Origin: Zygophlyctis sp. KS116
Taxonomy: Eukaryota > Fungi > Chytridiomycota
Direction of reading: 5' to 3'
DNA length: 15,179 nt
NCBI GenBank assembly: GCA_054661495.1
Contig: BAAFSQ010000239.1
Location: 1 to 15,179, forward strand
Part shown: positions 6,343-8,256 of the stretch, piece by piece
How positions within the stretch are numbered: position 1 is the first letter of the stretch
Layout of the letters: each line of letters begins with the position of its first letter
Translations under genes and position numbers: made by a program
Notes under the pieces: generated by a model
Seen by the model: the letters and a program-made list of their open reading frames with translations, nothing else
Databases searched by the model: none
Told to the model about the DNA's origin: nothing

Positions 6343-6945
6343 ATGGAGCTTAAGTCTGCATCATCTGATTGGGAATGGAGGCCTCAGAAGAGAAAAGCAT
6401 TTGATGATGTTGAGCTGCGATATAGCAAAATCTCAAAAGTAGAGTCTGACGAAATACTCAAAGAGAATAAGATTCAATGTTGGTATTCACCCCGATGCAC
6501 ATCACTCTCTGCATTTTCATCGTTTATGGAATATGAAGAGCATTACAAATCTTATCATGAAAATCTATGTTCTCAATGCAATTATGTTTTGCCTACTTTG
6601 CATTTATTGCATCTTCACTTGCTGGAAAAGCATGATTCGTTCTTTGCTACAAAGTGCGTCACAACCAAATGTTATGAATGTTTTGTTGAAGATTGTAAAA
6701 AGAAATTTAGAAACTCAAAGGATCGGATCAGACATTTGATTAATGCACACAAGTTTCCCCCAAATTTTGATTTTAATGTCATCAAAGGTCTTAAATTACA
6801 AATTTCAGGCAATCAAATCCAGGAATCTCGAAAAGAAATTATCAACTCAAATGATATAGATCAAGATTTAAGTAGTTTCTTTTCTAAATTATCTATTCCC
6901 AGATCAGTACAACTTTTAAAGAACAAGACAAAAACTGCCAGTTAA
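6343..6945 (+). CDS. ZNF511-like C2H2 zinc-finger protein, about 200 aa (start could be an upstream in-frame ATG at 6265/6292/6295)
   Basis: Three fingers: CWYSPRC..YEEHYKSYH, CSQC..LHLHLLEKHDSFF, YECFVEDCKKKF..RIRHLINAHKFPPNFDF. The EKHDSFF and HKFPxNFxF tails are typical of the ZNF511 family. Confidence 0.85.
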   Translation: MELKSASSDWEWRPQKRKAFDDVELRYSKISKVESDEILKENKIQCWYSPRCTSLSAFSSFMEYEEHYKSYHENLCSQCNYVLPTLHLLHLHLLEKHDSFFATKCVTTKCYECFVEDCKKKFRNSKDRIRHLINAHKFPPNFDFNVIKGLKLQISGNQIQESRKEIINSNDIDQDLSSFFSKLSIPRSVQLLKNKTKTAS

Positions 6946-6947
6946 TT

Positions 6948-8256
6948 CTAAATTTCAGGTATTAGGATATATGTAGTCTTTCTATAATCCCGGTATTCTT
7001 TGCCAAAAAAGTCAATTAAAGCAGTTTCTTCAGTTACGATTCTATCTGAAAAAAACTTTGAAAGAATTTTGATATAAGCGACCAAACACAAAGGATTCAT
7101 TAAGATTATTTGTAATGCTATAGCCCAATAAAAAAACCCAGTATATGACGGATGACGAAAATACTTGTAAATTCCAGTTTTAACCAATTCGTGTCCTGAA
7201 ACTTTTGTGATTCGAACAAGATGAGTAAAATTAGATTTTGCAGTTAACATTGCTAATGAACGGATGAATTGTCCCAATAAACATAAAACTATTGCTACAT
7301 TTGTCATCCAATTCCAAGATTTAAGAGAAGGAAATAAATACCATTCAATTGCATATTCTAAAAGACTTGCAAATGTTGCAAAAGTATATTCAGGACTATG
7401 ATTTAGCAAGAATGCAGATAATGTGACTTGAGTAGAATTTACAGCAATACAAACATATTCCAAAAAATGAAAAATGGATAGAAACGCAATATAAACTCCC
7501 AATCCTTTTAAAGATGTTAAGACCGACATTACAATTCCTAATCCAGTAAAAAGACCCAAGAAAGAAGCTCTATGAAAAACACTCTGTCTTGTATGATCAA
7601 AAGATATCAATGTCATATTTTGAACAGGAATAGTAAGCTTTGGAACCGCTTCAACCAATATTTGATCAGAGAGTAGTAACCATAAGAAATACAACCCAGA
7701 AAATACTCCATTCAATATCAAACAATGTCCAATCCAACCTAAAAAAGTAATCTTAATTAATAAAGAATTCAATTGTACTTGATCCCTGATTACATTTTCC
7801 AAGTCTGTTCTTTTCAGGTATTTCTTTGTCTGAAATGATAGATATTCCATACAATATACAACTGAACGCAAGATTATTGACATTATAACAAGAACGATCC
7901 CAGTCTTCTTTAATGGAATGTTACGCCAGTATAATCCTTCCAGTAATGCAACAAAAATAAGATAATTCCGGTTCAAAGGTTCCATTAAGCCTTGAATTTA
8001 GAAGATCAAATATCAACTTACAAGACAAATCAGTTGATTTCGGGTCTCGGGCGGTGCAGAGAGTATAATGAAGAAATATCTCAAAACAGAGCAAGAGTCC
8101 AGAGAGTGCGATATCAGAATTTACAATTCGATGTATTCCAATAGCGCTCCCAAGTAATATTCCAAGTCCCCAACCGACGGACGCAGTCCATGCAGGCAAC
8201 ATAGGATTTGTGCAAGGTTGAGAGTCACTAATAATTGCAGAAGAAAATGATTTCAT
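6948..8256 (-). CDS. STE14: Isoprenylcysteine carboxyl methyltransferase with an N-terminal degenerate ICMT-like domain; 2 exons (8256-8022, 7990-6948), 425 aa
   Basis: The C-terminal 222 aa (from Met at 7616) carry FHFLEY, FLLNHSPEY, GQFIRSLAM, NFTHLV, HELVKTGIYKYFRHPSYTGFF and FFSDRIVTEE..LIDFFGKEY. A 31-nt intron 8021-7991 (GTAAGT...CAAG) joins the 7921..8256 ORF in frame. There is no stop between the two halves. Confidence 0.9.

What the first reader, a model, noticed from the sequence alone, without database searches (positions are those of the whole stretch)
6948..8256. STE14/ICMT built as an internal tandem: a dead ICMT-like domain fused to an active ICMT (covalent pseudo-dimer)
Seen: after removing one 31-nt intron the gene is a single 425-aa frame, nearly twice yeast Ste14 (239 aa). 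The C-terminal 222 aa are a complete ICMT. The N-terminal 203 aa are colinear with ICMT segment by segment (N-half vs C-half): GWGLGILLG vs ASFLGLFTG; FLHYTLCTARDPKSTDLSCLM vs FLEYVCIAVNSTQVTLSAFLL; VALLEGL vs ASLLEYA; GIVLVIMSIILRSVV vs AIVLCLLGQFIRSLA; FLGWIGHCLILNG vs FFYWAIALQIILMN; LLSDQILVEA vs FFSDRIVTEE. The N-half has lost HxLVxxGxY, RHPSY, the SDR arginine, the EE pair and the terminal helix. It keeps a glycine zipper G28-G32-G36-G40 (8175-8137), whereas the active half has only one GxxxG there. Established: yeast Ste14 oligomerises, and its TM1 G31xxxG35xxxG39 motif (LGILLGIFVG) is implicated. Inference: the duplication fixed an asymmetric pseudoenzyme/enzyme dimer in one chain, with the dead half acting as scaffold, lipid/substrate holder or regulator. 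I know of no description of this architecture but could not search for one.
Basis: partly seen in the sequence, partly recalled or inferred. Interest (0 to 1): 0.85.

Follow-up and report, generated by a model that had tools for sequence, protein, structure and literature searches.

The report
Chytrid Ras methyltransferase with dead twin
In one large branch of chytrid fungi, the enzyme that methylates Ras-type proteins (ICMT/Ste14) is a double-length chain in which a catalytically dead copy is fused in front of the working copy, which gives a natural way to test why the yeast enzyme is reported to need a partner while the animal enzyme has extra helices instead.

Summary
Confirmed. The gene (8256-6948, minus strand, one 31-nt intron) encodes 425 aa: a complete ICMT preceded by a degenerate ICMT copy. 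The window's own dead half is not significantly similar to ICMT by itself. Relatives settle it: Spizellomyces, Powellomyces, Rhizophlyctis, Polyrhizophydium, Homolaphlyctis, Globomyces, Boothiomyces and metagenomic chytrids carry the same tandem; their dead halves match ICMT (HHalign 99.2%, E 8e-20). The window's intron sits at the ancestral ICMT intron site and phase, and the dead half is under purifying selection. Named tandems fall in the Rhizophydiales+Spizellomycetales+Rhizophlyctidales clade (Entophlyctis helioformis aside); five other chytrid lineages have single ICMTs. All 21 dead halves scanned lack the SAM-pocket motifs. An AlphaFold model of a full-length relative (pTM 0.86) superposes on 8-helix beetle ICMT from residue 7-8, so the dead copy's first helix apparently sits where the animal-specific M1 does. 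Best reading: a covalent pseudo-dimer with a structural dead half. The four-glycine zipper is local, not family-wide. No transcript or assay evidence; no description found in the searchable literature or earlier in this scan.

The parts
8022..8256 (-). Exon 1: residues 1-78 of the dead ICMT copy (first two predicted membrane helices, equivalents of ICMT M3-M4)
   Evidence: conserved at 51-62% identity in L003/L004, omega 0.23-0.56 in distant pairs
8137..8175 (-). G28-G32-G36-G40 glycine zipper in dead-half helix 1 (clade-specific; first Gly family-wide)
7991..8021 (-). 31-nt GT-AG phase-1 intron at the site of ancestral chytrid ICMT intron 1 (just before S/A-F-L-L-N-H)
7617..7990 (-). Exon 2, 5' part: rest of the dead ICMT copy (M5-M8 equivalents; SAM-pocket connector replaced, M8 cut short) and linker
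   Evidence: omega 0.15-0.55
6948..7616 (-). Exon 2, 3' part: complete, motif-intact ICMT/Ste14 catalytic domain
7143..7193 (-). HxLVxxGxY..RHPSY cofactor-pocket motifs of the active half
7026..7043 (-). M8 arginine and EE pair of the active half (beetle R246, E250, E251 by alignment)
8253..8256 (-). Stop codon of the upstream gene overlapping the ICMT start codon (ATGA; TAATG in three relatives)

Best explanation
This is the organism's only STE14/ICMT orthologue. An ancient DNA-level tandem duplication, probably once in the ancestor of Rhizophydiales+Spizellomycetales+Rhizophlyctidales, fused two 6-helix ICMT units in one frame (shown by sequence, intron positions and distribution; single origin inferred). 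The C-terminal unit methylates prenylcysteine with SAM (inferred from intact motifs). The N-terminal unit lost the SAM pocket, the M8 Arg/EE and the terminal helix and cannot methylate (inferred from motif loss in every member). It is kept because it folds in the membrane in the same orientation and packs its first helix or helices against the first helix (M3) of the active unit, the surface covered by M1-M2 in animal ICMT and, by report, by a second subunit in yeast Ste14 (inferred from a predicted model). So the chain is a covalent, asymmetric pseudo-dimer whose dead half is a structural partner that supports the fold or activity of the live half.
For: Dead half is ICMT-derived: Spizellomyces self-match E 2e-15, Polyrhizophydium E 3e-9, profile-profile 99.2%, E 8e-20; a dead-half profile run on 1.84 billion proteins returns ordinary ICMTs. 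Intron marker: window intron at ancestral site and phase; Powellomyces dead half keeps introns 1 and 2. One open frame across the junction in window, P0020, L013, L017. Motifs absent in 21/21 dead halves, present in 10/10 full live halves. Omega about 0.15-0.56 in dead half vs 0.18-0.26 in live half. AlphaFold of P0020: pLDDT 85, pTM 0.86, parallel helix pattern in both halves; aligns to beetle ICMT over 262-263 residues, rmsd 3.1-3.2, model 7/8-429 against chain 2/3-276, whereas the archaeal ICMT without M1-M3 aligns only to 240-426 (one search gives 275 aligned to an arthropod ICMT). Animal-type M1 weakly matches dead-half helix 1 (score 20.3, E 1.4e-3, 0/60 shuffles) and not M5-M8. Clade support from PMC9457484.
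Against: No transcript covers the gene; no assay. The packing comes from one model of a relative, read only through aligned ranges, and AlphaFold may be biased by the beetle structures (released January 2018). A model of the window's exon-2 dead part alone was poor (pTM 0.38) and matched only generic hairpins. The whole six-helix dead unit is kept although only its first helices would be needed for this contact. Dead halves share only about 23% column identity with no invariant residue. The gene tree is unresolved (AU p 0.37 for one clade).
Confidence: 0.55

Rival explanations
1. Entrenched relic (constructive neutral evolution): the fusion gave no new capability. After fusion the N copy decayed because the homodimer interface was already satisfied in cis, and it is now kept only because deleting or misfolding it would harm the chain. 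The C-half would still work alone by homodimerising.
For: No invariant residue and fast divergence of dead halves; live halves keep their own M3 glycines invariant; sister lineages do well with a single unit.
Against: No loss of the dead half was seen in any named genome of the clade checked at DNA level, though a start-codon shift could remove it; the N-terminal residues are strongly conserved in the window's clade.
Confidence: 0.2
2. The dead half is a ligand-binding or regulatory pseudoenzyme: it holds prenylated substrate or lipid, or docks partners (Rce1/Ste24, GTPases), and hands substrate to or tunes the active half.
For: All six helices are retained and confidently modelled; the M6 arginine (beetle R173 by alignment) is the majority residue in dead halves and an M4/M5 glutamate is often kept; the SAM connector is replaced by a new helix (130-142 in P0020).
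Against: That arginine is lost or Lys in several members; FHxxEY, FLLNH and NFxH are gone in all; no invariant pocket residue.
Confidence: 0.17
3. In the window's own clade the N-terminal half is not the ancestral dead ICMT but an unrelated membrane domain, or the upstream exon is not part of the product.
For: Direct similarity to ICMT is not significant; fragment model uninformative; no RNA coverage.
Against: Colinear matches of both exon pieces to the dead-half profile, 0/100 shuffles; intron at the homologous codon and phase; same length and position as in other tandems; Met at 7616 not conserved (Ile in P0004, absent in other chytrids); intron conserved in four loci whose exon-1 frames stop shortly after it if unspliced.
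Confidence: 0.05

Closest known systems
Fungal Ste14p / 6-helix ICMT (Saccharomyces; single-unit ICMTs of Synchytrium, Polychytrium, Cladochytrium, Anaeromyces, Mortierellaceae)
   Same: Each half begins at the M3-equivalent helix with the same upstream motif; the live half has all family motifs; ancestral intron positions shared.
   Different: Two units in one chain, the first without cofactor pocket. Yeast Ste14p is reported to oligomerise between chains (Griggs et al. 2010, PMID 20202940; title seen, content from my own knowledge).
Animal ICMT (Tribolium 5V7P/5VG9; human)
   Same: Live half aligns to M3-M8; in the model the dead half's N-terminal helix region occupies the M1-M2 region. [quoted passage not shown]
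   Different: Animals add two helices; these chytrids add a whole six-helix degenerate unit.
Tandem pseudoenzyme-enzyme proteins (JAK JH2-JH1 and GCN2 pseudokinase-kinase; from my own knowledge)
   Same: Internal duplication with a dead N-terminal copy next to an active C-terminal copy.
   Different: Those are soluble kinases with shown regulatory roles; here an intramembrane methyltransferase, with no regulation shown.
Paired ICMT genes at the Rhizopogon vinicolor B mating locus (PMC5473757)
   Same: Duplication of ICMT in a fungus.
   Different: Two separate genes flanking a locus (abstract), not a fused dead-live chain.

Membership tests
ICMT/Ste14 (C-half) | PF04140 above curated cut-off | tested here: met
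   100 bits vs cut-off 24
ICMT/Ste14 (C-half) | HxLVxxGxY, RHPxY, RIxxEE, FHxxEY, NFxH motifs | tested here: met
   present in window and 10/10 full live halves
ICMT/Ste14 (C-half) | ICMT fold | tested here: met
   relative P0020 model vs 5vg9: Z 24.7, rmsd 3.1, top of 48,161 chains; window sequence vs 5vg9 E 4e-56
ICMT/Ste14 (C-half) | SAM-dependent methylation of prenylcysteine in the ER | not testable with these tools
   needs assay
ICMT homologue (N-half) | Profile homology to ICMT | tested here: met
   family: HHalign 99.2%, E 8e-20; window clade only through the dead-half profile, E about 1e-3 per exon, 0/100 shuffles, plus intron marker
ICMT homologue (N-half) | ICMT fold of the N-half on its own | tested here: inconclusive
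   helix pattern parallels the live half in the full model; window exon-2 fragment model pTM 0.38, generic hits
Active ICMT (N-half) | Cofactor and catalytic motifs | tested here: not met
   0/21 dead halves carry any of six motifs
Tandem pseudoenzyme-enzyme | One chain, dead copy under purifying selection | tested here: met
   open frame across junction; omega mostly 0.15-0.56; protein-level expression not shown
Tandem pseudoenzyme-enzyme | Dead copy changes activity or stability of the live copy | not testable with these tools
   needs truncation and complementation
Ste14-type GxxxG dimer interface | GxxxGxxxG zipper conserved in dead-half helix 1 | tested here: inconclusive
   four Gly invariant in window clade; family-wide only the first Gly is nearly constant

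The most novel reading that the evidence does not exclude
All eukaryotic ICMTs need a second M3-like helix packed on M3 of the catalytic unit, and evolution supplied it three ways: homodimer (yeast), a short added M1-M2 hairpin that may itself be a partial M3-M4 duplicate (animals), and a whole dead twin (these chytrids). The chytrid chain would then be a ready-made model of the unsolved fungal Ste14 dimer, and the dead unit may also have become a lipid-binding regulator.
Probability: 0.35. Interest if true: 0.78.

Novelty: new variant of a known kind. Interest (0 to 1): 0.62.

Why it matters
ICMT is the only enzyme for the last step of Ras/Rho CAAX processing and a drug target. Whether and how the six-helix fungal enzyme works as a dimer, while the animal enzyme was solved with extra helices, is open (own knowledge). 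A natural single-chain dead-live pair makes this testable with simple truncations and gives a construct for a dimer structure. It is also a membrane-enzyme pseudoenzyme kept across three fungal orders, a possible molecular marker of that clade, and it is hidden in databases: Pfam sees only one domain and at least three public annotations cut the dead half off.

Tried and rejected
Direct BLASTP, Pfam and HHalign of the window's N-half against ICMT: not significant. RNA support: three metatranscriptome runs gave four short contigs in neighbouring genes, none in the ICMT gene. Word-based search with the Spizellomyces N-half found only one more Spizellomyces. ESM Atlas feature search with a dead half: scores under 0.9, ICMT clusters among the leads only. 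Fold of the window's exon-2 dead part: low confidence, generic hairpin hits. Gene tree of live halves: unresolved, neither shows nor rejects one origin. Primary papers on Ste14 oligomers and the beetle structure are not held; searches for ICMT with chytrid or Batrachochytrium found no paper. Rejected: assembly artefact (same architecture in cultured-species genomes and independent metagenomes); adjacent pseudogene (open frame, selection); start at Met 7616 (not conserved); retro-duplication (dead half keeps introns). As the operators asked, the spliced model was searched exon by exon and the joined 425-aa protein was never searched or folded; the full-length structure is therefore of a relative (P0020).

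Full report
Observation. The minus-strand gene has exon 1 at 8256-8022, a 31-nt GT-AG intron at 8021-7991 and exon 2 at 7990-6948, 425 codons in all. The last 222 residues are a full ICMT (PF04140 100 bits; E 4e-56 to beetle ICMT). It is the only STE14 orthologue found in the assembly; the other PF04140 hit is a 212-aa distant paralogue at 28% identity. The intron is supported by conservation: four related loci have it at the same codon and phase, 25, 25, 26 and 31 nt long, with conserved coding sequence on both sides. No RNA contig covered the gene. An earlier scan note on genome-wide 24-30 nt introns in this genome agrees with this size.

Is the N-half an ICMT copy? Within the window alone the match is not significant (BLASTP E 0.6-1.6; HHalign E 0.014 and 0.074). 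Relatives decide it. ICMTs of 396-472 aa occur in Spizellomyces, Polyrhizophydium, Globomyces, Boothiomyces, Rhizophlyctis rosea, Homolaphlyctis (partial) and several metagenomic chytrids. In Spizellomyces the N-half matches its own C-half at E 2e-15 over 186 columns. The profile of six N-halves matches the ICMT profile at 99.2%, E 8e-20, over 175 columns, and the same profile run against 1.84 billion proteins returns tandems and ordinary ICMTs, plus three repeat-rich false hits. The two exon pieces of the window's clade match the enlarged dead-half profile in the right order (scores 24.7 and 26.2, E about 1e-3, each above all 100 column shuffles). An independent marker agrees: chytrid ICMTs have a phase-1 intron just before S/A-F-L-L-N-H (Powellomyces, Anaeromyces, Polychytrium, Cladochytrium), and the window's intron is phase 1 at the aligned codon of the dead half; the Powellomyces dead half keeps this intron and the next ancestral one. 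The duplication was therefore at DNA level.

Distribution. Three genomes annotated with a short ICMT have an unannotated dead half directly upstream: Powellomyces hirtus, GCA_025526955 (Gorgonomyces by my recollection) and Entophlyctis helioformis; in the last two the frame runs on into the live half. No dead half was found upstream in Polychytrium, Cladochytrium, a Chytridium-like record or Anaeromyces; Synchytrium proteins are single (DNA not checked). The named tandems belong to Rhizophydiales, Spizellomycetales and Rhizophlyctidales, the one strongly supported multi-order chytrid clade in PMC9457484. E. helioformis is filed under Chytridiales by NCBI, but its dead half is of the Polyrhizophydium/Homolaphlyctis type and I recall it grouping with Rhizophydiales. 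The gene tree is unresolved and does not reject one origin. Batrachochytrium was not found in the searches and is untested.

Dead but kept. None of 21 dead halves (some partial) has HxLVxxG, RHPxY, RIxxEE, FHxxEY, FLLN or NFxH; all 10 full live halves have all six. In the window's clade dN/dS is 0.15-0.56 for the dead half in distant pairs against 0.18-0.26 for the live half; dS is near saturation, and the one close pair gives 0.20 for exon 2 but 1.0 for exon 1 on 8 changes. The Met at 7616 is not conserved. The four-glycine zipper is invariant in the window's clade, but family-wide only the first glycine is nearly constant. The M6 arginine (beetle R173 by alignment) survives in most but not all dead halves.

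Structure. A full-length intronless relative, P0020, gave pLDDT 85 and pTM 0.86, with a parallel helix pattern in the two halves; the cofactor connector of the dead half is replaced by a short helix and its last helix is cut short. This model superposes on the 8-helix beetle ICMT over 262-263 residues at rmsd 3.1-3.2, from model residue 7-8 and beetle residue 2-3, while the archaeal ICMT aligns only to residues 240-426. Since sequence homology to the beetle chain starts at about residue 55-63, some 40 residues of the beetle M1-M2 region are matched by the dead half, starting at its first helix. The M1-M3 region is described as animal-specific and as packing on M4 and the M4-M5 junction (PMC13007279). 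Animal-type M1 also shows a weak, short sequence match to dead-half helix 1 and to fungal M3 but not to M5-M8; this is a lead only. Limits: only ranges are reported, not contacts; one model; possible memory of the beetle structure; the model of the window's exon-2 dead part was uninformative.

Mechanism. Shown: duplication, fusion in frame, loss of catalytic motifs, retention under selection across three orders. Inferred: the live half methylates prenylated CAAX proteins; the dead half inserts in the same orientation and covers the M3 face of the live half, the place taken by M1-M2 in animals and, from my knowledge of Griggs et al. 2010 (title only seen), by a second subunit through the TM1 GxxxG motif in yeast. 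I put this structural pseudo-dimer reading at 0.55, an entrenched relic with no added function at 0.2, a ligand-binding or regulatory role at 0.17, and a non-homologous or untranslated N-half in this clade at 0.05. The first three are not fully exclusive.

Novelty. Dead-live tandems are known in other enzyme families, so this is a new variant of a known kind. It is of real interest to ICMT and pseudoenzyme specialists because it makes the fungal dimer question testable with truncations. Interest 0.62.

Noticed in passing
window 8253-8256; L003 2707-2711; L004 296-300; L005 2730-2733; L006 near 1117: The stop codon of the upstream same-strand gene (GH26-like, hydrophobic C-terminal tail) overlaps the ICMT start codon in all five loci of the clade: ATGA in two, TAATG in three. 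Unusual in a eukaryote; either extreme compaction with the promoter inside the upstream gene, or stop-restart coupling on a shared transcript.
   Followed up: partly
window 6945-6948: The convergent C2H2 zinc-finger gene ends 2 nt from the ICMT stop; the same neighbour is kept in L003, L004, L005, and a C2H2/DUF7565 gene lies upstream and divergent in Powellomyces.
   Followed up: partly
L003 2941-2965, L004, L006, window 7991-8021: Orthologous intron of only 25, 25, 26 and 31 nt, against 39-359 nt for ICMT introns in other chytrids.
   Followed up: partly
L007 1745-2500, L013 2027-2580, L017 1490-2350: Public gene models of Powellomyces hirtus, GCA_025526955 and Entophlyctis helioformis omit the dead half; Spizellomyces sp. 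'palustris' model P0065 appears to retain an intron in it.
   Followed up: yes
animal-type ICMTs P0010, P0151, P0038 and others: Their M1 starts with a P-V-F-E-G-K-V-A-L pattern like the fungal M3 start (P-I-L-D-G..N-V-A-L), hinting that animal M1-M2 arose by partial duplication of M3-M4; weak scores only.
   Followed up: partly
P0002 and P0004: RHPSY reads CHPSY in two close relatives, a change at an otherwise nearly invariant arginine.
   Followed up: no
L002 1312-1950 (G000:C253): Second, intronless 212-aa ICMT/PEMT-family gene, 28% identical to the live half; looks like a different subfamily.
   Followed up: no
P0108 (675 aa, Logan): A longer ICMT with an N-terminal ICMT-like start (TPQNVALY) and a large insertion; may be another tandem type.
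   Followed up: no
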